Below are positions 25,626 through 37,906 of a DNA stretch of 64,000 nt, piece after piece. How positions within the stretch are numbered: position 1 is the stretch's first letter; every line of letters begins with the position of its first letter. Below the pieces are notes generated by a model. It did no database searches and was not told where the DNA came from. It saw only the letters and a list, made by a program, of their open reading frames with translations. Source of the DNA: Mytilus edulis (lineage: Eukaryota); contig NC_092349.1 of NCBI RefSeq assembly GCF_963676685.1, forward strand, positions 54,746,001 through 54,810,000, given 5' to 3'. The translations under genes and the position numbers were made by a program.

Positions 25626-27499
25626 TATAAGAACCATTATACTGCCATCAATACATTCTTGTGTTGCCCTACCGACCTACCAATACATGTATTTTTGGTA
25701 ATTGTCTAAATCATAGCGTAAACGTAATGCATTTTCTAAAATGCCTTTCATTTGTGCAGACATTTTCTTAAATGCCTGAATCGTACATACATCTAAGAAA
25801 ATGCCTAAATTAAAAAAAACAATGCATGTAACAAATGTATACTACGTCTAGTAAACTGTCTTGAATACATTCTTATGTTTCTGTTTTCTAGATTTAGGTG
25901 CGTACGTTCTTTTTTAAACTTTAAGGCCTAACTATGCTTTTTTCGAACTTTCTTGGTTCCGTATACGATGCAGGAAATGGTTACCCTTCCGGAGCACCTG
26001 GTTTCACTCCCGGTTTTTAGTGGAGTTCGTGTTGTTTCTTAATTATTATTTATAACTGTTGAATGTAAATGTCCTTTGGTTTTGTGAGTCCTTTCTACTC
26101 ATTGGTTTTGATTTTTATTGTCTTTTGCACGTATATTATTTCCCCATTTGTTTACGTTGGTACAAATTTGTAATACTGAAACTATTTGTCCCTATATCCT
26201 ACTTCGGAGTCCAGTTAGATACATATTTAATGAAATCAAATAACAATAATTCATTAACCATGCAGATAACTTAAACAATAAGCATGATAAGTATATCAAA
26301 TACTTTGAATTCGGGCTTTATTTACATTTCAAATATTTGATCATTTAATATGTGTTTGACTTTATAATTGAAATTTGACCTCACGCCTACCACGCCCATT
26401 AAAATTACTAAAATTCTTAGTATCTTACCATTTTATTAACAATTTGATTATTTACAAAAAAAAAGAAGACTAAAGTATTACATAACACTACTTAAAATAA
26501 AACAAGTCGTTGGATTTCGATCTCAAACGAACTATCTTACTGAGAGTTACCTTGTAATGCCCTTTTTGTGCAAACATATATCATGCTAATGACACGCGAC
26601 TTCAACCGCGTGTACATGCACTTTCAATTGTTTATCTTTGCTACGTTTACAAAAAATGCTGATTCTAATGTTTAATGCTTATATGATAACCTTGATATAA
26701 ACTAAAATATGCAGTAACTACGAATAATGACTTAACAGCAATCCAATAGTGCGTCGGGAAGGTTATCCAACATACATGTACTTTAACGAACCAATTAAAA
26801 TCTATAATGTACTAAATGTGTTTTTCAAAATCGAATGATTAACATGATTAAGTCTTAAGTGTTAATTCTCGCTAGGGAGAAGAGCCACAACAGAAGGTCA
26901 ATTGACCACAACAAAACAGTGAATATGGAATACTTTAAATGAATTACAAACTGTTTTGGTTAATTATTTTGATGAATACAAAAGTGTCCAGTAGCAAATA
27001 TTGCATGCATACATGTATTCAGAGTATTGTTAAATATCTTTACTCTTGAGTTATATTTCACCTACGCACTAATTTGATGTGTGCACCTGCTGCTTACAGC
27101 TCACATTCGAAAAGAAATGGACCCCTATCGACATTGACATAACATTTAGAGTCTTCATGATGATATGTGGATGTTTAGAGTCCGACTATCCTGTCTGGAT
27201 ATCGCGGACTGTAGCAACCTATTTTATAGACTGAAGTCTGTCTGTCTTTTGGCCTTCATTTTACTCCGACTGCGTTGGTGTTGCTGGTACGGAGTATCTG
27301 GCCGTGCTGCTTGTATGGCTGATTGTATTGCCTCTTTGGAGTTGTAGGGACTGGTGACAATATCCCTATTGACTACAACCCCAACTGGTTCCCCTTTGTA
27401 CTTAGTTGGTGTTAGTACGTGTCCAACTACGCTGTCTCTTGCCTCTGTTTGTGTGATGGTGGTTTGTTGGACTTTGTCAGCAGGTATCACGGCTGTTTT

Positions 27500-29451
27500 T
27501 GTACTGTTACCAGTGTTGATTTTTTATTGTTTAACAGAAATTCTATCGATTTTTCATAAGTTTTCCCGGACTATTTTTTATTGCTAGATTTTTGTACTTT
27601 GAAGTTCGTTACTGTCCCCCTTACTTTTTTGTTTCCTAAATTGAAAGCATGAACGTGGTCACAGCAAGGCCGTAACTACCCTTGAGGCATTGCCTCACTA
27701 AAATTTCGACACTGATTACATTAACCTAGTAACGATAATCATCATGGATCTCTAGTTAAAAACAGGCTCTTGCAGAAAAAGGAAAAGCTAGTTTTTTGTG
27801 AACAGAGTCTGAGTCTTGCATATAACTTCGTTAGAACAATCCAAAAACGATAAGTAGACTGACAAATCAAGTACAGGTCTTCGGAAGGGGGCAGTCCTGT
27901 CTGCGTATTCATTTCTCCGTTTTCACCAACTTTTGAGAAATCAAGTACTGGGCATCGCAAGGGGGTAGTCCTGTCTGCGTATTCATTTCATGGATTAGTT
28001 TTTATCCATGTTTCTTTAACCTTAAAAATTTAAAGAATATATCCCATATTCCAATTTGATATTATTGAGAAATGGTAGAACCTTTAACACAGGATTTTGT
28101 CTTTACTTATTCGGGACTATGGAATTTCGTTTCTTTATATTCGGGTTTTCGGAATCGGACACCCCAACCACTAAATTTATAGATTCTGGAACTAAAATAC
28201 CACCAACTATTTCCAGAAATAATTTTAAATTACGGACCTACATGTAAACGTCAAAATCTCCATTCCAATTCCCCTGTACCCATATCATATATACTTACTC
28301 TATAGATAGAATCATATACATGTATCTTATCTCATTCTATCCCTAGTTTGTCTACTCTATGTCAGCATTAAAGCGAGTTTAATATTTTGTAACTGCGACT
28401 GTATGATGGTGCTTACAGGAAAGCTTAATTCCCTTTTGCAAACGAAACTGTTGCTACCGAATTGCTAATGGAGTAGGAATTGGAAGAAGACATTGATCAT
28501 TGTGTTGATGATAATGTGCTACCTTTCGAAACACAGACTGCCCTGAAACGACTGAAAACTTGGAAAAGAGCATGCATGAGTGGCGAGAGATTGTGCAGTC
28601 TTGCCATGCTCCATGTTAATCGCGATAAGGATATCAGCAGACCAAATTATGAATCTGAAACGATTTGGCTGAACCGGCCATAGAAAAATTTGGCAAACTC
28701 TACTAACTCGATGTTTATTCTATGTTCTGGCAGCAGACTCAAATCAGTGAAATTTGGATGATTATCTTGCATATAAATTTAAATAAAGTTGTTAAAAATT
28801 TGGTGTTAGCAAAAGTCTTTAAATATAAAAAAATATATATAAAAAGTGTCCAAATTCAAAACATTATCAAAGTCTCTAAAAATACCTAGAATGCAGGATT
28901 TTGCACCATTCATTTCATACCCTCCAAAAAAAAAATTCGCCTCGCTTCGCCTCCCTTCGCTCGGCTCAATTATTTTGCCTCACTAAAATAAGATGCCTAG
29001 TTACGGCCTTGCACAGGCATTTAAAAGTATCGTAAACTACGCCAACTCACAATGTAAGTTTATAATTCATAGTTTTTAATGATTGTATGATGAAAGTTAA
29101 TATGTTTCCACATCAAGATAAATTTTGTATATGTGTATATCAGCCAAAAGTGAAATATGATGATTGTTAATTTTGTCACTGTTTTTACAAAAGTATGGAA
29201 AGCCATTTGGTGCTATAATTTTTGAATGATTTGATTGAAAATTCATTTTGATACATAGATTTGAACTGTTAGTTTTATGATTTTTGTAGTCATGAGTATG
29301 ATGAGTTAGCTAAGGTTTTGTTTTTGTTTTTTGTAGCTTTTTACCAACATCACAGCACACATATGTAGAACTTGTTATTTCATGGTTTTCGAAATAAAGG
29401 ATATACATTACTGTGGCTTATGGTTATACTAGTATGCACTGAGGCAGAATA
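27500..29451 (+). repeat. BEL 5' LTR, interrupted by a hAT derivative
   Basis: Matches the 3' LTR on both sides of the 27665-29011 insertion. Differences seen are a 7-bp indel and one substitution. Ends TG..TA. Confidence 0.9.
27665..29011 (+). mobile_element. Non-autonomous hAT-derived DNA transposon nested in the BEL 5' LTR
   Basis: Perfect 14-bp TIR CAAGGCCGTAACTA/TAGTTACGGCCTTG and duplication CACAG; the empty site is visible in the 3' LTR. hAT C-terminal dimerisation remnant ALKRLKTWKRACMSGERLCSLAMLHVNRD at about 28540-28630. Confidence 0.85.
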
Positions 29452-29463
29452 GTAAAAAGATTG
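29020..29463 (+). promoter_or_regulatory. BEL LTR core: TATA-like box, intra-LTR intron, poly(A) signal and non-tRNA primer-binding site
   Basis: TTTAAAA 29020-29026; donor GTAAGT at 29054; branch-like GCTAAG, T-rich tract and acceptor TAG ending 29336; AATAAA at about 29393; GTAAAAAGATTG 29452-29463 abuts the LTR end. Confidence 0.6.
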
Positions 29464-29521
29464 CAAAGACACAGTTCGATACAGAATAACATGCAGTAGT
29501 TCCTACAAACAATTTTATGAA

Positions 29522-32500
29522 ATGGCTCAATCACAACCACTTCCGCCTGAAACAACAGTAACACATGAACATAAAATGACAGAGAAAGGTAAAGAACTTT
29601 ATCATTCACATAAGATAGAATACCTTAAGCAAATTGACGGTTCGTGGGAAACTATAGAAAATTTACTCGAAGAATTATCAGAGTGCTCGAAGGAGCTGAA
29701 ACCTCTACGCAAACTAGAGAAAAACATTTTGAAGTCTCGTGAAAAATACTGTGAAAACTCAAATCAATATATTGAGTTTTTGACACGCAAGAATAATGAA
29801 GACAGTAATGACGCATTACCCACCTTTAAGACTGAGTTTAAAAAGTGCAATGAAATCATTGACAATACATTACAACAAATTAAGACATTGAAATTAACCG
29901 CAGCTGAAACTATGTCAGTAGTTCCTGTAGAGTCTGTCCGTTCAAACAATAGTGGTAAAAGCGGCTCAATTTCGAGTTCAGCTATGGCTAGGAAGCGTGT
30001 AAATGCTGAAGTTCAACGAACAAAGTTACAATATGCGGAACAACAAACAAAATTAATTAAGCAAAAAGCAAGATTAAGTGAATTAGAAACACAGTCTAAA
30101 GCTTTAAAGGACCGTGAAAAAGCTGAAGTTGATGCAGATCTAGCACTGCTTAAACAACAGACAGAAGCCGCTGTCGCAGAGGTCGAGGTCAAAGTTTTAG
30201 AAGAAGCCGAGAGCGATAGAAGATCCTTGTCGTTACAAGAAGACAAAGAGTATTTACAAAAAGTGAAAATGACACTAACAGAAAAGTAATACTATGTAAA
30301 TGAACAATTTAATGAAGTGGAACAACTCAAATCTCAAGACAAGAATAATAATGTTCCGCAAGATATTCCGAACAATCAAGACAAATTTAGTTCACATACT
30401 CCGGCACCTCGGAACCAGTTAAACATAATTCCTACGTCAAGGAATTTGCCAAAATTTCAAGTCGACGATTTGGATCGATCGATAGTTGAAGATATTAAAC
30501 CAGAAATTCGGCAAAAACAAACATTTAATCCTTATGCAGCTGATTTTGAATTAACTCAACCACCACTGCCACCAAATCATGATCAGTCTGTAGTGTCTGA
30601 CTTGACAAAGTTTTTGTTGAAGAAAGATTTATTACTTTCTAGATTTCAGAATTTCGATGACTGTCCCGAAACTTATGCTTCATGGAAAGCTACCTTTAAA
30701 AGTATTACTGAAGAACTCTCAGTTACGGCTTTCGAAGAAATGGACTTATTAGTTAAATGGCTCGGCCGTGAATCTTCAAAGTTTTCGCAAAATATTCGTG
30801 CGTCAAATGTGAACAATCCAAATGCTGGTCTTCGTCGTATATGGGAGCGTCTTGACGAACGCTATGGTAGACCTGAGATGGTAGAAGCTGCAATTAAAAC
30901 AAAACTACAGAAGTTTCCAAAGTTAACAAACAAGGATCATAGTCGACTTTATGAGCTATTAGATATTCTCACACAAATAGAATCTTCGAAAGAGAATGAG
31001 ACATTTTCAAATTTTTGTCATATTTCGACTCTTCTTCTGGTGTTTTACCAATTGTGGACAAATTACCATATAATATACAAGAGAAGTGGACAACACGTGC
31101 ATCGCAATACAAACTGAGGAACAACGTACCATTTCCACCTTTTTCGTACTTGGTGCAATTTATCAGAGAGGTTAGTGCTGTCAAAAATGATCCCGCGTTT
31201 ATTTATAGTAATACTGAAACGTCGTATTCTAGGAAAAATGAAACACGGAAAGTTAACCATGGTGCAACGTCAGTGTTTAACCGAAAAACGGATGTTAATA
31301 TTAAACAGAAGGAAGAGAAAGAGACAGTACGTTGTCCTATTCATAAAGCCAATCATCATTTGAATACTTGTCGAGCCTTTAAAGCAATGACTTATGAAGA
31401 ACGCAGAAAGTATCTGAAGGACAATAATATTTGTTTCAAATGCTGCCATTCGACAACTCATATGTCACGAAATTGCACTGTAACTGTAAAATGCGATCAT
31501 TGTGGAAGTAATTATCATATAACCGCTATGCATGTAACTGCAAAATCTAGTTGTCCTGACGGCGGAGAGAAATCATCTGATACAACGCAAAATGCTAATG
31601 ATCAAACAGTGTCATCCAAGTGCACGTTTTTATGTGGATTTAGTGGTAAATCATGTGGAAAAACCGTTCAGGTCCGTGTGTACCCGAAGAACTTCCCAGA
31701 TAAAGCCGTTAATGTGTACGCTATACTGGATGACCAAAGTAACAGAACTCTTGCTAAGACTGAGCTGTTCGATCAATTAGGTATAAATACATCGGCCATT
31801 CAGTATACTATGTCGTCTTGTGCTGGACGCACTATCATGAATGGTAGATGTGCAGAAAGTCTGATAGTTGAGTCATTGTCTGGTAATGGAGAACTTGAAA
31901 TACATTCAGTAATAGAGTGCAGTGCAATCCCAGACGAAAAATCAGAAATTCCGACTCCGGATATTGCTAAATCCTATCCCCATTTACGGGAGATAGCTCA
32001 TCAAATGTTAGATTTGAATCCAAATATAGACATTCAACTTTTGATTGGAAGAGATGTCCCAGAAGCGCACCACGTGTTTAGACAGTTGACAGGACCGAAG
32101 GGCACGCCATTTGCCCAGGAGCTCTTTTTCGGTTGGGTAATTATAGGCGATGTTTGCTTAGGCAAAGTACACAAACCAAATTTTGTCAATGTCAATAAGA
32201 CTAATGTAATGAACAATGGTAGAGGAACTATATTTGAACCTTGTATTAACACTTTGTATGTAAAGGAAAACACTGAATTGGCTCATATCAGAGATAATGT
32301 TCATTCACAAAGATGTAACAATGACCCATTGTTTATTAAAACCAAAGATGACGACAAGATTGGCACATCAGTCCAAGACCGCTTGTTCCTTAATCTCATG
32401 GATTCTGAATTTAAGAAAGATTCAAATGGGCACTGGACTGCACCCCTCCCTTTTAGACCAAATAAACAACGATTGCCGAACAATAGGAGTCAAGCATGGA

Positions 32501-35500
32501 AAAGGGCTCAAATACTCGATAAATCTTTCCAACAAAATTTTACAAAAAAGACTTATTTTGTAGAATTTATGCAAAAAGTATTAGTTAGCGGAGCAGCGGA
32601 GGTAGCTCCCATAATCACAGATGAGGAGTGTTAACGTTGGTATCTCCCCCTTTTTGGCGTTTACCACCAGAACAAGCCTAACCAGATAAGAGGCGTATTT
32701 GATTCCTCAGCATCTTTCGAAGGAGTATCTCTCAATAGCGTTATGATGTCAGGACCAGATCTCACTAACAACCTACTTGGTATTTTGTTGCGTTTTCGCA
32801 GTGACCAGTTTGCGGCCACTGCTGATATAGAACAAATGTTTTATCAATTCTACGTGAGAGAAGAAGATAGAAACTTTTTGAGGTTCTTTTGGTACAAGGA
32901 CAATAACCCAGATAATCCGCTTATAGAACATCGGATGTGTGTCAATGTTTTTGGCAATAGCGCTTCTCCTGCAGTGGCAACGTATGGATTACGTAAGACA
33001 GTTGAAAACTCTAATGAAACGTTCGGCTCAGATGTTAAGACTTTCGTTAACAGGGATTTTTACGTAGACGATGGGCTCATTTCCTTGCCTGAAAGTGAAC
33101 AAGTAATTGATCTTATAACAAGAACGCAGATGGCGCTAAAAACAGAAGGTAACATTAGGTTACACAAGATTACATCAAATAGTAGCGACGTAATGAAGGC
33201 TTTCCCTACCGATGATATTGGAAAGGATCTCAAGAATTTAAACTTGTGTGAAGACTATTTTCCGGTACAACACAGCCTTGGCCTCGCTTGGGACTTAAAC
33301 ACTGATAGCTTTATATTTACCCCATTACAAGATGATAAACCCTGCACCCGTAGAGGTATTCTTTCGTCATTGAATAGTATTTTTGATCCGATTGGATTCT
33401 TGTCACCACTCACAATTAGCGGAAAGATTTTGTTGCGAGATGCATCCCCACCGGGTACTGATTGGGATGAATGTTTATCACAAAGTTTTCAAGAGAAATG
33501 GAATGAATGGAGGATCTCTGTTTTGTCACTTCGAGAACTTAGTATACCGCGTATGTATATACCTATGTCAATCAGTGTTATGGACAACTTAGAAGTACAT
33601 GTATTTTCAGACGCTTCAGAGAAGGCAGTTGCGGCTTCGGCATATTTAAGAGCTATCGACACATATGGGACCAGTACCGTAGGATTTATTATGGGAAAAT
33701 CGAAACTAGCACCTCTTAGCGGAAACACGATACCAAGATTAGAGTTATGTGGGGCTGTCTTGGCAACCGAAATTGGAAAAATAATATCTGAAAATTTAGA
33801 TGTTCCGTTGGACTCTATCAAGTATTATTCTGATAGCAAAATTGTGTTAGGATATATCACTAATCAGACCCGACGTTTTCACACCTACGTGTCAAACAGA
33901 ATTGAACGCATTCTGAGTGTATCGTCGTCAAATCAGTGGCAGTTTGTCCCAACACATTTAAACCCATCAGATTGCGGTACACGTTCCTCAATATCTGTTG
34001 ATATGGAAAACAATCCATGGCTTCTTGGGCCGAAGTGGATGAAGAACTCTGACGAGGAAGCTCAATGTGATGTCAAAATATTATATCCGTTAGTTAGTCC
34101 AGATAATGATAAAGAGATTAGAAAAGAGATAAGTGCATCGAAAACGTCAATAGATGCGCTTGCGCCAATAGTAGGGCGTTTTAAAAAATTCTCTAGTTGG
34201 AGACGGCTTGTGAAAGCTATATCATTTTTGCAACATGTGGCTCAGTCATTCAGTTTAAAGGATAAGTCGTGCCAAGGTTGGCATTTTTGTCAAAATGTCA
34301 TGTCAGTTGATACTTACCAAAAAGCGGAATTATTTATCTTGAAGGAATGTCAGAAGGAAGTATATTCGCAAGAGATAGAATGTTTGGCTAGAGGCACAAA
34401 CATTTCAAAACAATCATCTTTAATCTCTCTTTCGCCATTTTTGGATTCACAAGGTTTGATTCGTGTAGGAGGACGTTTGGAAAAGGCAAAGTCTTGGCTT
34501 CCGACAGGAGAAATTAACCCAATTATCATTCCGAAAAATAGTTACATTAGTAAGCTTCTTATAGACCGCTATCACAATTCAGTGAAACATCAGGGTAGAC
34601 ATTTAACTGAAGGTGCGTTAAGGAGTGCAGGATACTGGCTAATTGGAGCTAAACGATTAATTTCTTCATTTATACAAAAGTGTGTAATATGCAGGAAACT
34701 TCGAGGAAAGTTCCATGAACAAAAAATGGCGGACTTGCCTTCTGATAGACTAACACCAGGGCCTCCGTTCACATTTGTAGGTTTGGATACCTTCGGACCT
34801 TGGCAAGTATTAACTCGTAAGACACGTGGAGGTTCAACAAATAGTAAAAGGTGGGCTATTTTATTTACATGTATGACTACGAGAGCAGTTCATATAGAAG
34901 TGATAGAATCATTAAGCAGTTCCTGTTTTATAAATTCACTTCGTAGGTTCCAGTCATTACGCGGACAAGCCAAAGTGTATCGATCTGACCGTGGGACAAA
35001 TTTCATAGGTGCCACAGATGATTCAAATATTGAAGCTATAAATGTTGAAGATTTGACAGTTAAAAACTTTCTATGTGAATCTGGTTCAGTATGGAAATTT
35101 AACCCTCCCCACTCTTCCCACATGGGAGGAGTGTGGGAAAGGATGATAGGTGTCACACGAAGAATATTAGACGCTGTTATCTTAACTTCTAGTAGTAAAA
35201 GTTTGACTCATGAAAGTTTAACAACATTCTTAGCTGAAGTGACCGCTATTATTAACGCAAGACCCATTGCACAGATATCATCAGATCCGGAAATGCCTTT
35301 GATTCTAAGTCCATCAATGCTCTTAACTGGAAAACAAGACTACTTACCTGTGATAACGGACACATACAATCTCAAGGATATGTATCGTGCACAATGGAAA
35401 CATGTGCAAATTCTATCAGATATATTCTGGAAGCATTGGAGGTCAGATTATTTACAATGTTTGCAACAGAGACGTAAATGGCACGTTGACAAAGACGATA

Positions 35501-35691
35501 TCAAAGTTGGTAATGTAATTCTTATGAGAGACAAATCTATTTACCGAGGAGAGTGGCCACTAGGCATTGTGGAGGAAGTTTTCAAAAGCGATGATGGAAA
35601 AGTACGCAAGGCTCGCCTCCGCATTTACAAGGAAGGAAAAGCTGTTACATATACTAGACCGATTAGTGAGATGGTTTTATTGGTAGACTGA
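29522..35691 (+). pseudogene. BEL/Pao gag-pol polyprotein, disrupted (frame breaks near 30290 and 31015, stop at 32632)
   Basis: Gag with three Cys/His knuckles, protease YAILDDQS, RT (ADIEQMF, FGNSASP, FYVDD), RNase H (VFSDAS, TIPRLELCGA, SDS), integrase (HHCC, LDTFGP, SDRGTNF, WERMI) and a GPY/F-like C-terminus. Confidence 0.92.
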
Positions 35692-35892
35692 TTGTGAATA
35701 TTGACAATATTGAACAATTTATAAAAGGTTTAAGTGTTGTTTGTATTTTTAGTGTGTTTTTTATGCTGAAGGAATGTTCTTCGATAGCATTGATTTTTCG
35801 TAATAGTCAAAATTGTGACTTATTTTTACATTTGGTATATTTGCATAAATTTGTTGTAAAATATTATCATGGGAATGATAATAGACGGGGAG

Positions 35893-36499
35893 TGTACTGT
35901 TACCAGTGTTGATTTTTTATTGTTTAACAGAAATTCTATCGATTTTTCATAAGTTTTCCCGGACTATTTTTTATTGCTAGATTTTTGTACTTTGAAGTTC
36001 GTTACTGTCCCCCTTACTTTTTTGTTTCCTAAATTGAAAGCATGAACGTGGTCACAGGCATTTAAAAGTATCGTAAACTACGCCAACTCACAATGTAAGT
36101 TTATAATTCATAGTTTTTAATGATTGTATGATGAAAGTTAATATGTTTCCACATCAACTGACAAGATAAATTTTGTATATGTGTATATCAGCCAAAAGTG
36201 AAATATGATGATTGTTAATTTTGTCACTGTTTTTACAAAAGTATGGAAAGCCATTTGGTGCTATAATTTTTGAATGATTTGATTGAAAATTCATTTTGAT
36301 ACATAGATTTGAACTGTTAGTTTTATGATTTTTGTAGTCATGAGTATGATGAGTTAGCTAAGGTTTTGTTTTTGTTTTTTGTAGCTTTTTACCAACATCA
36401 CAGCACACATATGTAGAACTTGTTATTTCATGGTTTTCGAAATAAATGATATACATTACTGTGGCTTATGGTTATACTAGTATGCACTGAGGCAGAATA
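35893..36499 (+). repeat. BEL 3' LTR (607 bp)
   Basis: Starts TG right after the PPT and ends GAATA before the TSD. Contains the same intron-like segment (36095-36384) and AATAAA (36441-36446). Confidence 0.92.
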
Positions 36500-37906
36500 G
36501 TTTTTGTTGCCATCCACTGGTCAAAACGCTTTGCGTCTCTTCTGTTGGATGGTGGCTTACTTTTCAGGGCCGGCTTGGATTTACTAGAGGATGCCTCTGG
36601 CTCCTTAGCCTTTGTCTTGGTCCACGTCAACTGTACTGACACCTGGTCATGATGATTTGTCCAAAAAGTGAGTAGTGTTAATTAAGCAGTGATCAGTACG
36701 AGTACTTCAATGAAAAAGTTTTCATTGAATAATTACATATTAATTGTTTGTTGTATAATCACCAACCCCTCTAATTGTATGGGTGTATATCTTTTTGGCT
36801 TGGATGGGATCGAATCTACACATTTTGATTTGATTGTTGATTGATCCATTCAAGCATATAAAGAAAGGGATCAACTAATAGTTTTGAGTAATGTGTAAAC
36901 CGTATGGATGGTGTTTTTTATCTGCCACTGGACAAGGTAAACAAAAAAACGCTTTATTTTTCAACTTCGACTACAATCTTAATTTATTAATGTCGGAAGA
37001 ATAATTTTAACATAGGCTAATTGATATATCTGTTTACTAAATTGATCTACACGTTTTAAATATATTGACCGACAGCAATCTGATAGTGCATTGGATAGTA
37101 AAATCTACTTTTAAACATACCAAAATACAAATTAAAAGTGGAATTTTCATAGACACAAAACCCGACTACCGAGCAGAAAACAGCCAAGACTTCAATTGGG
37201 TCGATCCTTTAAGTTAACGCAAAAAAACACCAGGAGGCTTCAATTGGTCTCTAGACAATACTATATGAAATATTTCAGCGAAATGAACGCCACACCAAAG
37301 TCCACCTCATGCTTGGATGTTTATTAAACCCAGGAAGAATAATTGAATGATTGGTAATTCATTCGTGCAATAGAGAAAAGAACACCACTATAGTCTACAG
37401 TATCGTTTTAGTAAATTAAACATATTAAATTATGAATACTTATGTCCAGCATCAAGTATTTCATATTTAATTGTTGTTGTAGAATTTTACCTAATTGTGT
37501 TAACAGGTCATGTATCGCTTGCGATGACTGTGTGCAGCACATGTGCACCAATTAATACTGATATACAACATTCAGAATATTTGAACCGCGACCAGTCTTA
37601 GTTCTTACTTTTAAATATTGCTAGATTCTCATATAAGCATTTACTTGTACAAAAGTGCCAATCTTAAAATAACTTCGTTTGGTGTGGGAACTACCCATTT
37701 TGATTTGATTATTGATTGCGTAACAGCCATTGGCAAATATTTCATGCATATTTTGGACGAGAGACATTGGAAAGGATTATATTGGATAGGGCTGAAACTC
37801 AATTTAATACGACCCCACCATCGGGTTTGCACGGATTTTTAACGTACAGAAGACACTTAGCCTATGCGTTACATAGTATTTCAGTTCCTTATACCGATTA
37901 AACTAA

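What the first reader, a model, noticed from the sequence alone, without database searches (positions are those of the whole stretch)
29020..29463. Candidate splicing-dependent self-priming in a BEL/Pao retrotransposon: an LTR intron whose splice junction builds the RT primer
Seen: no TGG-type tRNA PBS follows the 5' LTR, whose end (29451) is fixed by the TSD; the adjacent bases are GTAAAAAGATTG (29452-29463). Both LTRs contain an intron-like segment with donor GTAAGT (29054), branch-like GCTAAG, a T-rich tract and acceptor TAG (29336); the 3' LTR copy is 36095-36384. Joining the exons gives CACAAT|CTTTTTACC. CAATCTTTTTAC is the exact 12-nt reverse complement of the PBS-position sequence, with 4 nt from exon 1 and 8 nt from exon 2, and pairing stops exactly at the LTR boundary. 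A TATA-like TTTAAAA at 29020 would put the start site near 29049, so the spliced RNA would begin almost exactly with this 12-mer. Established: fission-yeast Tf1 self-primes by pairing the first 11 nt of its transcript to a PBS abutting the LTR, followed by RNase H cleavage. Inference: this element self-primes similarly, but the primer exists only after splicing of a very short first exon, and the intron must be inherited through the unspliced 3' LTR copy or the primer supplied in trans. I know of no description of this for BEL/Pao but cannot verify novelty.
Basis: partly seen in the sequence, partly recalled or inferred. Interest (0 to 1): 0.95.

Follow-up and report, generated by a model that had tools for sequence, protein, structure and literature searches.

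The report
Retrotransposon primer assembled by splicing
A mussel BEL/Pao retrotransposon, together with at least seven other families in the same genome, has an intron inside its LTR whose exon-exon junction is the exact complement of the primer-binding position, so the element most likely primes its own reverse transcription with an RNA that exists only after splicing.

Summary
The element (27500-36499) is a young BEL/Pao copy with 607-bp LTRs. No TGG-type site follows the 5' LTR. The only consensus splice donor in the LTR and a textbook acceptor would join CAAT to CTTTTTAC, the exact complement of 29452-29463.

Comparison supports the interpretation. Seven more BEL/Pao families of this genome (a Mytilus mussel; gag 34% identical or less) have the same layout: one consensus donor, one acceptor, and a site abutting the LTR end. 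Their junctions differ, and each site differs to match. Total pairing is 11 nt in six families, 12 here and 14 in one. Swapping exon-1 ends between families leaves 0-2 nt paired.

Two independent LTR copies lack the intron at the predicted junction, to within about one base, which indicates splicing followed by reverse transcription.

RNA evidence could not be obtained, so the transcription start, exon-1 length and primer use remain inferred. No held paper describes self-priming in BEL/Pao elements, and the ICTV profile calls them tRNA-primed. The scan's first stage noted the same idea (11 nt) on another piece of this genome (s1-838826).

The parts
27495..27499 (+). Left target-site duplication gtttt
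   Evidence: the same 5 nt follow the 3' LTR at 36500-36504.
27500..27664 (+). 5' LTR, left part (U3 start, TGTACTG...)
   Evidence: 100% identical to 35893-36057.
27665..29011 (.). 1347-bp insertion with terminal inverted repeats (CAAGGCCGTAACTA...TAGTTACGGCCTTG) that splits the 5' LTR; TSD cacag at 27660-27664 and 29012-29016
   Evidence: absent from the 3' LTR and from the other copies.
29012..29451 (+). 5' LTR, right part (end of U3, exon 1, intron, R, U5)
   Evidence: matches 36053-36499 with one substitution and one 7-bp indel.
29020..29026 (+). TATA-like TTTAAAA, about 30 nt upstream of the CA at 29048-29049
   Evidence: sequence only. Function not tested. An AT-rich box at a comparable distance is seen in only some other families.
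29050..29053 (+). End of exon 1 (CAAT), which pairs with 29460-29463
29054..29336 (+). LTR intron, 283 nt: GTAAGT donor, GCTAAG branch-like site at 29309-29314, T-rich tract, TAG acceptor
   Evidence: It is the only GTRAGT in the LTR. It is absent at the junction, to within about one base, in the related LTR in L023.
29337..29344 (+). Start of exon 2 (CTTTTTAC), which pairs with 29452-29459; the predicted primer 3' end is C29344
   Evidence: CTTTTTACC or a covarying variant follows the acceptor in all eight families.
29393..29398 (+). AATAAA polyadenylation signal, which places exon 2 in R
   Evidence: A signal lies between exon 2 and the LTR end in 7 of 8 families.
29452..29463 (+). Primer-binding position GTAAAAAGATTG, abutting the LTR end
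   Evidence: Identical in all 7 full copies of the family.
29522..35691 (+). gag-pol region, broken into four ORFs in this copy (29522-30289, 30317-31117, 31015-32634, 32743-35691)
   Evidence: Peptidase_A17 (E 1.3e-43) and DUF5641 pass Pfam's curated cut-offs; DUF1759 and Integrase_H2C2 fall below them.
35871..35892 (+). Polypurine-rich tract directly upstream of the 3' LTR
   Evidence: sequence only.
35893..36499 (+). Intact 3' LTR (607 bp): exon-1 end 36091-36094, intron 36095-36384, exon-2 start 36385-36392
36500..36504 (+). Right target-site duplication gtttt

Best explanation
The element is a BEL/Pao LTR retrotransposon that primes minus-strand DNA synthesis with a piece of its own RNA, as fission-yeast Tf1 does. 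The difference is that the priming sequence is split in the genome by a spliceosomal intron inside the LTR.

Inferred sequence of events:
1. Transcription starts in the LTR a few nucleotides upstream of the donor.
2. Removal of the 283-nt intron from the 5' copy joins CAAT to CTTTTTAC.
3. This 12-nt junction folds back onto GTAAAAAGATTG, which abuts U5.
4. A cut after ...TAC, by RNase H by analogy with Tf1, leaves a 3'-OH.
5. Reverse transcriptase extends it through U5 and the exon-2 part of R.
6. After transfer to the 3' R, synthesis continues through the unspliced 3' copy of the intron, so progeny LTRs keep the intron.
7. If the 3' copy is also spliced, progeny LTRs lack the intron.
8. Plus-strand copying of the primer rewrites the PBS in each cycle, which would keep junction and PBS matched.

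Shown here: the complementarity, its covariation across families, its position at the LTR boundary, canonical splice signals, and intron-less copies. Inferred: the transcription start, cleavage, priming, and whether the primer acts in cis or in trans.
For: (1) There is a 12-nt perfect junction/PBS complement ending at the independently fixed LTR boundary.

(2) The architecture recurs in seven other families of the same genome with different sequences:
- AGT|CTTTTTAC with GTAAAAAG-ACT (families A and B)
- AGA|CTTTTTAC with GTAAAAAG-TCT (C)
- TCAATAT|CTTTTAC with GTAAAAG-ATATTGA (D)
- CGTG|TTTTTAC with GTAAAAA-CACG (E)
- AGC|TTTTTCAC with GTGAAAAA-GCT (F)
- TGTCAA|TTTAC with GTAAA-TTGACA (G)
A family's own exon-1 end pairs 3-7 nt. 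An exon-1 end swapped in from another family pairs 0-2 nt (A and B share AGT).

(3) In seven families the pairing donor is the only GTRAGT in the LTR; in G it is GTACGT, one of two GTRNGT sites. The same scan gave 0 hits on the reverse strands of all loci and 0 in 20 shuffled sets.

(4) Total pairing stays at 11 nt in six families although the exon-1/exon-2 split varies (3+8, 4+7, 6+5). Tf1's primer is also 11 nt (PMC7175516).

(5) Intron-less LTRs joined at the predicted junction, to within about one base, occur twice: L023/L062/L063, a roughly 80% relative of this family still attached to its pol tail, and the 5' LTR in L043, about 98% identical to intron-bearing family-B copies.

(6) The leader has no TGG and Rfam finds no known RNA family.

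(7) A polyadenylation signal lies downstream of exon 2 in 7 of 8 families, and exon 2 alone already closes the R-U5 domain onto the PBS in the minimum-energy folds of families A-D.

(8) An exact exon-2...LTR-end/PBS pattern occurs 68 times in the genome against 0 for the reversed control.
Against: If the complementarity starts at the RNA's 5' end, the first exon would be only 3-7 nt, which I believe is unusually short for spliceosomal recognition (own knowledge, not tested here).

The model needs the 5' copy of the intron spliced and the identical 3' copy unspliced in the same RNA, or a primer supplied in trans. No feature that would make the two copies behave differently was identified.

Old, decayed relatives (L019-L021) have lost the donor GT.

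A TATA-like box at the expected distance is visible in only some families.

In this element's own fold the 8-nt exon-2 part pairs with the PBS only in the centroid structure, not in the minimum-energy structure.
Confidence: 0.78

Rival explanations
1. The spliced junction is the primer, but it comes from a different molecule or a different end than the reader proposed. It could be supplied in trans by a separate spliced transcript (for example the co-packaged partner RNA), or it could come from the spliced 3' LTR junction, with the exon-1 side of the RNA much longer than 3-7 nt.
For: This variant removes the need for one RNA to be spliced at the 5' copy and unspliced at the 3' copy, and it removes the need for a micro-exon. 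The covariation and the intron-less fossils fit it equally well.
Against: The constant 11-nt total despite variable exon-1/exon-2 shares is most simply explained by a primer whose 5' end is a fixed RNA end. A primer taken from the 3' junction would make intron-less progeny the rule, yet all 14 LTRs of this family and most LTRs of the other families keep the intron.
Confidence: 0.08
2. The pairing between the junction or exon ends and the post-LTR sequence is real and selected, but it serves something other than priming. It could bring the splice sites together in the pre-mRNA, or control packaging, dimerisation or translation. The true primer would then be unknown.
For: Covariation demonstrates pairing, not priming. 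The segment could pair with both exon ends before splicing as a three-way junction.
Against: In all eight families the pairing begins at the first nucleotide after the LTR (fixed by TSD and 3' copies here, by TGT..ACA or TG..TA termini elsewhere). The U5 end is, by established LTR replication logic, where minus-strand synthesis starts. The polarity puts the 3' end of the paired RNA next to U5. No other PBS candidate exists in the leader.
Confidence: 0.07
3. This is ordinary unspliced Tf1-type self-priming. Transcription starts at exon 2 (29337), only the 8-nt CTTTTTAC primes, and the intron is a U3/3'-UTR intron unrelated to priming.
For: Exon 2 to PBS spacing (89-202 nt), the polyadenylation signal and the R-U5 folds resemble a Tf1-like layout. 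The 8-mer core is the most conserved part. Intron-less fossils would also arise from splicing of a U3 intron.
Against: It cannot explain why the 3-7 nt before the donor, 213-535 nt upstream of exon 2, complement the distal PBS in every family and covary with it. Contiguous pairing in unspliced DNA is only 5-8 nt. It would also require the start site to coincide with a splice acceptor in eight families.
Confidence: 0.04
4. A host small RNA (a tRNA, a tRNA fragment or another RNA) ending in ...CTTTTTAC is the primer.
For: The PBS core GTAAAAAG is shared by several families, as would be expected for a common host primer.
Against: The distal PBS differs between families and matches each family's own exon 1. 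There is no TGG for a CCA end. A run of five T would act as a Pol III terminator inside a tRNA-type gene (own knowledge). The host small-RNA repertoire was not scanned.
Confidence: 0.02
5. Chance complementarity in AT-rich sequence.
For: For this element alone, allowing any GT..AG pair, P is 0.14-0.33%. That is small but reachable in a scan of many windows.
Against: Eight families show about 30 nt of family-specific exon-1/PBS pairing with a single consensus donor each, and the reverse-strand and shuffle controls give 0 hits.
Confidence: 0.01

Closest known systems
Tf1/sushi-type self-primed reverse transcription (S. pombe Tf1/Tf2; also proposed for the Tcn1 and TAR lineages)
   Same: There is no tRNA-type PBS. 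A PBS abutting the 5' LTR is complementary to a short stretch of the element's own R region, roughly 90-200 nt upstream. The pairing is 11 nt in six of eight families, the same length as Tf1's primer (PMC7175516). The polarity requires an internal cut to create the 3'-OH.
   Different: Tf1 and its relatives are Ty3/gypsy chromoviruses (TAR is Ty1/copia); this element is BEL/Pao. In Tf1 the 11 nt are contiguous at the start of R. Here they are split by a 213-535-nt intron and become contiguous only after splicing.
BEL/Pao (Belpaoviridae, Semotivirus) as described by ICTV
   Same: Pao peptidase A17, DUF1759, DUF5641 and integrase zinc domain; LTRs, a polypurine tract and a 5-bp TSD.
   Different: The ICTV profile describes an 18-nt PBS complementary to host tRNA-Arg or tRNA-Gly and replication primed by a host tRNA, and it lists vertebrates, insects and nematodes as hosts (PMC8742986). 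These mussel families have no such site.
Ogre (plant Ty3/gypsy) intron with partial splicing
   Same: It is an LTR retrotransposon whose life cycle depends on a spliceosomal intron removed from only part of the transcripts (PMC6317226).
   Different: Ogre's intron lies between gag-pro and RT-RH-INT and restores the reading frame. It is not in the LTR and has no link to priming.
Retroviral splice donors in R or the leader (own knowledge: HTLV-1, foamy viruses)
   Same: A splice donor close to the cap inside or just after the LTR, with the unspliced form needed for inheritance.
   Different: Those donors pair with acceptors far downstream to make subgenomic mRNAs. Here both splice sites lie inside the LTR and the product carries the primer.

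Membership tests
BEL/Pao LTR retrotransposon | Pao-type aspartic peptidase (Peptidase_A17) with RT/RNase H/integrase in gypsy order, and the DUF1759 and DUF5641 domains | tested here: met
   Peptidase_A17 at E 1.3e-43 and DUF5641 at 3.2e-23. DUF1759 and Integrase_H2C2 score below Pfam's curated cut-offs.
BEL/Pao LTR retrotransposon | Direct LTRs, a target-site duplication and a polypurine tract before the 3' LTR | tested here: met
   607-bp LTRs, TSD gtttt, purine-rich 35871-35892.
BEL/Pao LTR retrotransposon | 18-nt PBS complementary to the 3' end of host tRNA-Arg or tRNA-Gly (ICTV profile) | tested here: not met
   no TGG anywhere in the 70-nt leader. This feature describes the known members rather than defining the group.
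Tf1-type self-priming element | No tRNA PBS; the PBS next to the 5' LTR is complementary to the element's own RNA upstream in R | tested here: met
   11-14 nt in eight families, ending at the LTR boundary. The complement is bipartite in DNA.
Tf1-type self-priming element | The complementary stretch is the contiguous first 11 nt of the transcript | tested here: not met
   Contiguous pairing is only 5-8 nt; the remainder lies upstream of the intron. The transcript 5' end is unknown.
Tf1-type self-priming element | RNase H cut at the end of the RNA duplex and extension of the released 5' oligonucleotide | not testable with these tools
   This needs primer mapping on strong-stop DNA.
Tf1-type self-priming element | Membership of the Tf1/sushi chromovirus lineage | tested here: not met
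   Pao peptidase and DUF5641; no chromodomain hit.
Spliceosomal (U2-type GT-AG) intron | Consensus donor, branch-like site, pyrimidine tract and YAG acceptor | tested here: met
   GTAAGT, GTGAGT or GTACGT donors; T-rich tracts; CAG or TAG acceptors in eight families; GC content 23-32%.
Spliceosomal (U2-type GT-AG) intron | Removal at the predicted junction in vivo | tested here: inconclusive
   The evidence is indirect: two independent intron-less LTR copies joined at the predicted sites. L043 carries a 1-nt gain at the junction and a 1-nt loss after TAC. No RNA reads were available.

The most novel reading that the evidence does not exclude
The first exon of these elements is a capped micro-exon of only 3-7 nt, so the 11-14-nt primer is the entire 5' end of the spliced RNA. 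Splicing of the 5' LTR intron would then be the switch that turns a transcript into a reverse-transcription-competent genome, while the unspliced 3' copy carries the intron to the next generation. This host-spliceosome-dependent priming would be ancestral to a large clade of molluscan BEL/Pao elements rather than a quirk of one family.
Probability: 0.35. Interest if true: 0.95.

Novelty: new variant of a known kind. Interest (0 to 1): 0.9.

Why it matters
Self-priming has been an exception tied mostly to the Tf1/sushi lineage, and BEL/Pao elements are described as tRNA-primed. If this finding holds, three things follow.

First, it extends self-priming to a third LTR superfamily and to animals in which these elements are abundant: at least 68 such 5' LTR/PBS units in this genome.

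Second, it adds a new principle, in which the host spliceosome builds the primer. That couples RNA processing to the choice between translation and replication.

Third, it poses two questions that can be tested directly: how a cap-proximal donor only a few nucleotides from the RNA's 5' end is used, and how two identical introns in one RNA are treated differently.

It also has practical value. LTR annotation tools that look for tRNA PBS will misjudge these families. The junction/PBS rule gives a simple signature for finding them.

Tried and rejected
RNA evidence
The DNA around the Mytilus coruscus, M. edulis and ENA relatives found (named) could therefore not be fetched.

More genome sequence
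- As a result the 3' LTRs of the other families, the 5' end of the intron-less element in L023, and the 68 pattern hits could not be read in full.

Spliced model
- Complementarity was computed from the two exons separately.
- For the same reason the 12-mer was not searched genome-wide against possible host small RNAs.

Near-identical copies
- The seven copies of this family are 97-100% identical in the leader and carry the same PBS, so they say nothing about covariation.

Script errors
- A first enumeration script timed out. A second had a logic error. Only one search counts.
- Allowing any GT as donor produced spurious longer matches in three loci, so donors were restricted to consensus sites.

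Other dead ends
- MAFFT misplaced the short exon blocks across the large intron gap. The junctions were read from BLAST segments and the raw sequence instead.
- A strict search for a conserved intron motif shared across families found only this element's own copy.
- Rfam found nothing in 27000-37000.
- Seven literature searches found no description of BEL/Pao self-priming or of a splice-built primer. The BEL/Pao survey paper does not mention a PBS at all. Subscription journals are largely missing from that library.
Full report
ANATOMY

The window holds a BEL/Pao LTR retrotransposon at 27500-36499. Pfam finds the Pao peptidase A17 (E 1.3e-43) and DUF5641 above its curated cut-offs, and DUF1759 and the integrase zinc domain below them. 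The coding region is broken into four ORFs in this copy.

The 3' LTR is intact (35893-36499, 607 bp). The 5' LTR has two pieces, 27500-27664 and 29012-29451. They are separated by a 1347-bp insertion with terminal inverted repeats and a cacag duplication. Apart from it, the two LTRs differ by one substitution and one 7-bp indel, so the copy is young.

The element is flanked by gtttt. Six other 3' or solo LTRs of the family end at the same ...CAGAATA followed by unrelated flanks. The LTR boundary at 29451 is therefore firmly set.

THE OBSERVATION

- 29452-29463 reads GTAAAAAGATTG.
- The 70-nt leader contains no TGG.
- CAAT|GTAAGT lies at 29050-29059.
- GCTAAG lies at 29309-29314, followed by a T-rich tract and a TAG ending at 29336.
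- Exon 2 begins with CTTTTTAC at 29337.
- Exon-1 end plus exon-2 start is the exact reverse complement of the 12 nt, and pairing stops at the LTR edge.

When any GT and any AG in the LTR are allowed, a junction match of 12 nt or more arises for 0.14% of pseudo-PBS 20-mers taken from the element's interior, and for 0.33% of composition-matched random 20-mers. The LTR has only one GTRAGT donor.

ORGANISM AND COPIES

The genome is 1.37 Gb. Proteins 97-98% identical to this gag come from Mytilus edulis and M. galloprovincialis, and more distant ones from M. coruscus.

The family has seven full copies, 97-100% identical in LTR and leader, all with the intron and the same PBS. They say nothing about covariation.

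THE DECISIVE COMPARISON

A gag search of the genome returned many other BEL/Pao families, all 34% identical or less. The loci include 1.5 kb upstream of gag.

In each of seven further families the same layout appears: an LTR beginning TGT, one consensus donor, a pyrimidine tract with CAG or TAG, exon 2 beginning with a T-run, usually a polyadenylation signal, an LTR end ACA or ATA, and then a site beginning GTAAA. The junction and the site differ between families and match within each:

| Family | Junction (exon 1 \| exon 2) | PBS (proximal-distal) | Paired nt |
|---|---|---|---|
| A, B | AGT\|CTTTTTAC | GTAAAAAG-ACT | 11 |
| C | AGA\|CTTTTTAC | GTAAAAAG-TCT | 11 |
| D | TCAATAT\|CTTTTAC | GTAAAAG-ATATTGA | 14 |
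| E | CGTG\|TTTTTAC | GTAAAAA-CACG | 11 |
| F | AGC\|TTTTTCAC | GTGAAAAA-GCT | 11 |
| G | TGTCAA\|TTTAC | GTAAA-TTGACA | 11 |
| this element | CAAT\|CTTTTTAC | GTAAAAAG-ATTG | 12 |

Controls:
- Replacing a family's exon-1 end by that of another family leaves 0-2 nt paired. A and B are the exception because they share AGT.
- Unspliced DNA gives only 5-8 contiguous nt.
- The same scan gave no hit on the reverse strands of all loci and none in 20 shuffled sets.
- Because each LTR offers one consensus donor, the roughly 30 nt of family-specific exon-1 pairing cannot be a product of choice.

Of the 23 sampled loci, 17 show the full architecture with a GTRAGT donor and one more (L055, family G) shows it with a GTACGT donor. 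One (L043) is intron-less. Three (L040, L044, L058) keep the exon 2/PBS pair but have a damaged or interrupted upstream LTR. One (L052) is unclear.

Genome-wide, an exact pattern of acceptor-AG plus CTTTTTACC, a gap, the LTR end and GTAAAAAG occurs 68 times against 0 for the reversed control.

FOSSIL cDNAs

Two LTR copies lack the intron.

L023, duplicated as L062/L063, is a roughly 80% relative of this family. It is still attached to the homologous pol tail. In it the homologue of exon 1 (...cataat) runs directly into the homologue of exon 2 (catttaaaaatatcatagcac...). The BLAST segments end at the last base of exon 1 and resume three bases into exon 2.

L043 is a family-B copy about 98% identical to the intron-bearing L041 and L042. 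Its 5' LTR reads ...ggcacagt-t-ctttttac-gtttac..., so the 535-nt intron is gone.

Deletions that coincide with GT and AG at both ends, twice and in different families, are the signature of reverse-transcribed spliced RNA. So the intron is real, and spliced transcripts do enter the replication pathway.

MECHANISM

The U5/PBS boundary is by definition where minus-strand synthesis starts. The pairing begins there in all eight families, with the 3' end of the paired RNA (..TAC) next to U5. [quoted passage not shown]

If the primer is cut after ..TAC, strong-stop DNA covers only U5 and exon 2 downstream of the primer. After transfer it is extended on the 3' LTR, so the intron is inherited from the 3' copy if that copy is unspliced. 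Intron-less progeny result if it is spliced. This matches what is seen: intron-bearing LTRs are the rule and intron-less ones are rare.

Plus-strand copying of the primer would rewrite the PBS each cycle. That explains the strict match and, I infer, why pairing stops after 11-14 nt, namely at the primer's 5' end. On that reading exon 1 is only 3-7 nt long.

Some features are compatible with such a start site. The sequence before the pairing is ..CAC in five families. In this element the TATA-like box sits about 30 nt upstream of CA at 29048-29049. But other families lack a clear box, so the start site remains open.

Exon 2 alone already closes the R-U5 domain onto the PBS in the minimum-energy folds of families A-D. 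In this element it does so only in the centroid structure.

WHAT IS NOT SHOWN

Splicing in living cells, the start site, the cut and the priming itself are therefore inferred.

COMPARISON WITH WHAT IS KNOWN

This element works like Tf1-type self-priming but is not a member of that lineage: it has a Pao peptidase and no chromodomain. It also fails the feature that the primer is contiguous at the start of R.

It is a BEL/Pao element by its proteins. It departs from the ICTV description of that family as tRNA-Arg/Gly-primed (PMC8742986).

Plant Ogre shows that an LTR retrotransposon can depend on partial splicing, though for frame restoration rather than priming (PMC6317226).

Seven searches of the held literature found no report of self-priming in BEL/Pao or of a primer assembled by splicing. 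The library lacks most subscription journals, so novelty is probable, not proven.

The scan's first stage made the same suggestion, with 11 nt, for another piece of this genome (s1-838826). That agrees with families A-C found here but is not independent evidence.

VERDICT

Confidence is 0.78 that the spliced junction is the minus-strand primer. It is a new variant of self-priming, of high interest, and awaits RNA-level proof.

Noticed in passing
window 27665-29011: A 1347-bp non-autonomous element with terminal inverted repeats (CAAGGCCGTAACTA...) and a 5-bp duplication (cacag) is inserted in the 5' LTR, 8 nt upstream of the TATA-like box. It is absent from the 3' LTR and from the other copies. 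Its superfamily was not determined.
   Followed up: partly
L043:1140-1180 compared with L041 and L042: At the intron-less junction of the family-B copy, the 8-nt primer core is flanked by two small changes relative to a clean splice: one extra T between exon 1 and exon 2, and one C missing right after ..TAC, which is the predicted primer cleavage and strand-transfer point. These may be scars of reverse transcription or plain mutations.
   Followed up: no
loci L039-L061: Total junction/PBS pairing is 11 nt in six families even though the exon-1/exon-2 split is 3+8, 4+7 or 6+5. This suggests a fixed primer length rather than a fixed splice position.
   Followed up: partly
L015, L016, L017 (minus strand, about 1666-1710): In an approximately 80% relative, exon 2 starts CGTTTTAC and a perfect complement GTAAAACG lies 21 nt downstream inside R, forming a local 8-bp hairpin. 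In the window element that local complement is degenerate (GTAGAACT).
   Followed up: no
P0008 (Mytilus coruscus CAC5410022.1), residues about 80-115: A gene model reads through the LTR end and PBS of an 88% relative: ..TEAEQLKDCKD where the window encodes TEAE**KDCKD. This implies an LTR end GAACA (as in L023) and a changed third PBS base. The DNA could not be fetched to check the matching exon 2.
   Followed up: partly
L022:458-665: A related LTR fragment matches the window LTR from base 3 to the last base of exon 1 (..ctcacaat). It then continues ctgtatcc.., whose first four bases equal that family's exon-2 start (ctgtttac), before an inserted inverted-repeat element. It may be a third intron-less remnant, but the region is too rearranged to call.
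   Followed up: no
window 29191-29222; L041 about 880-915 and 1050-1085; L015: A motif inside the intron (aagtatggaaagc.att.gtg..ataattt) recurs by eye in the introns of otherwise unalignable LTR families. A strict mismatch-only search did not recover it because of indels. It might be an intronic regulatory or packaging element.
   Followed up: partly
L019-L021: Old relatives, about 78% identical, keep ..CTCACAAT but have GG or AA in place of the donor GT. These are decayed copies with a dead donor.
   Followed up: no
L015 (minus strand) after the LTR piece; L023 1790-1900: The same short repeat (..cacacacagaaacgaa.. / ..ttcgtttctgtgtgtg..) is inserted in or next to two unrelated LTR remnants. 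It is probably a common small mobile element of this genome.
   Followed up: no
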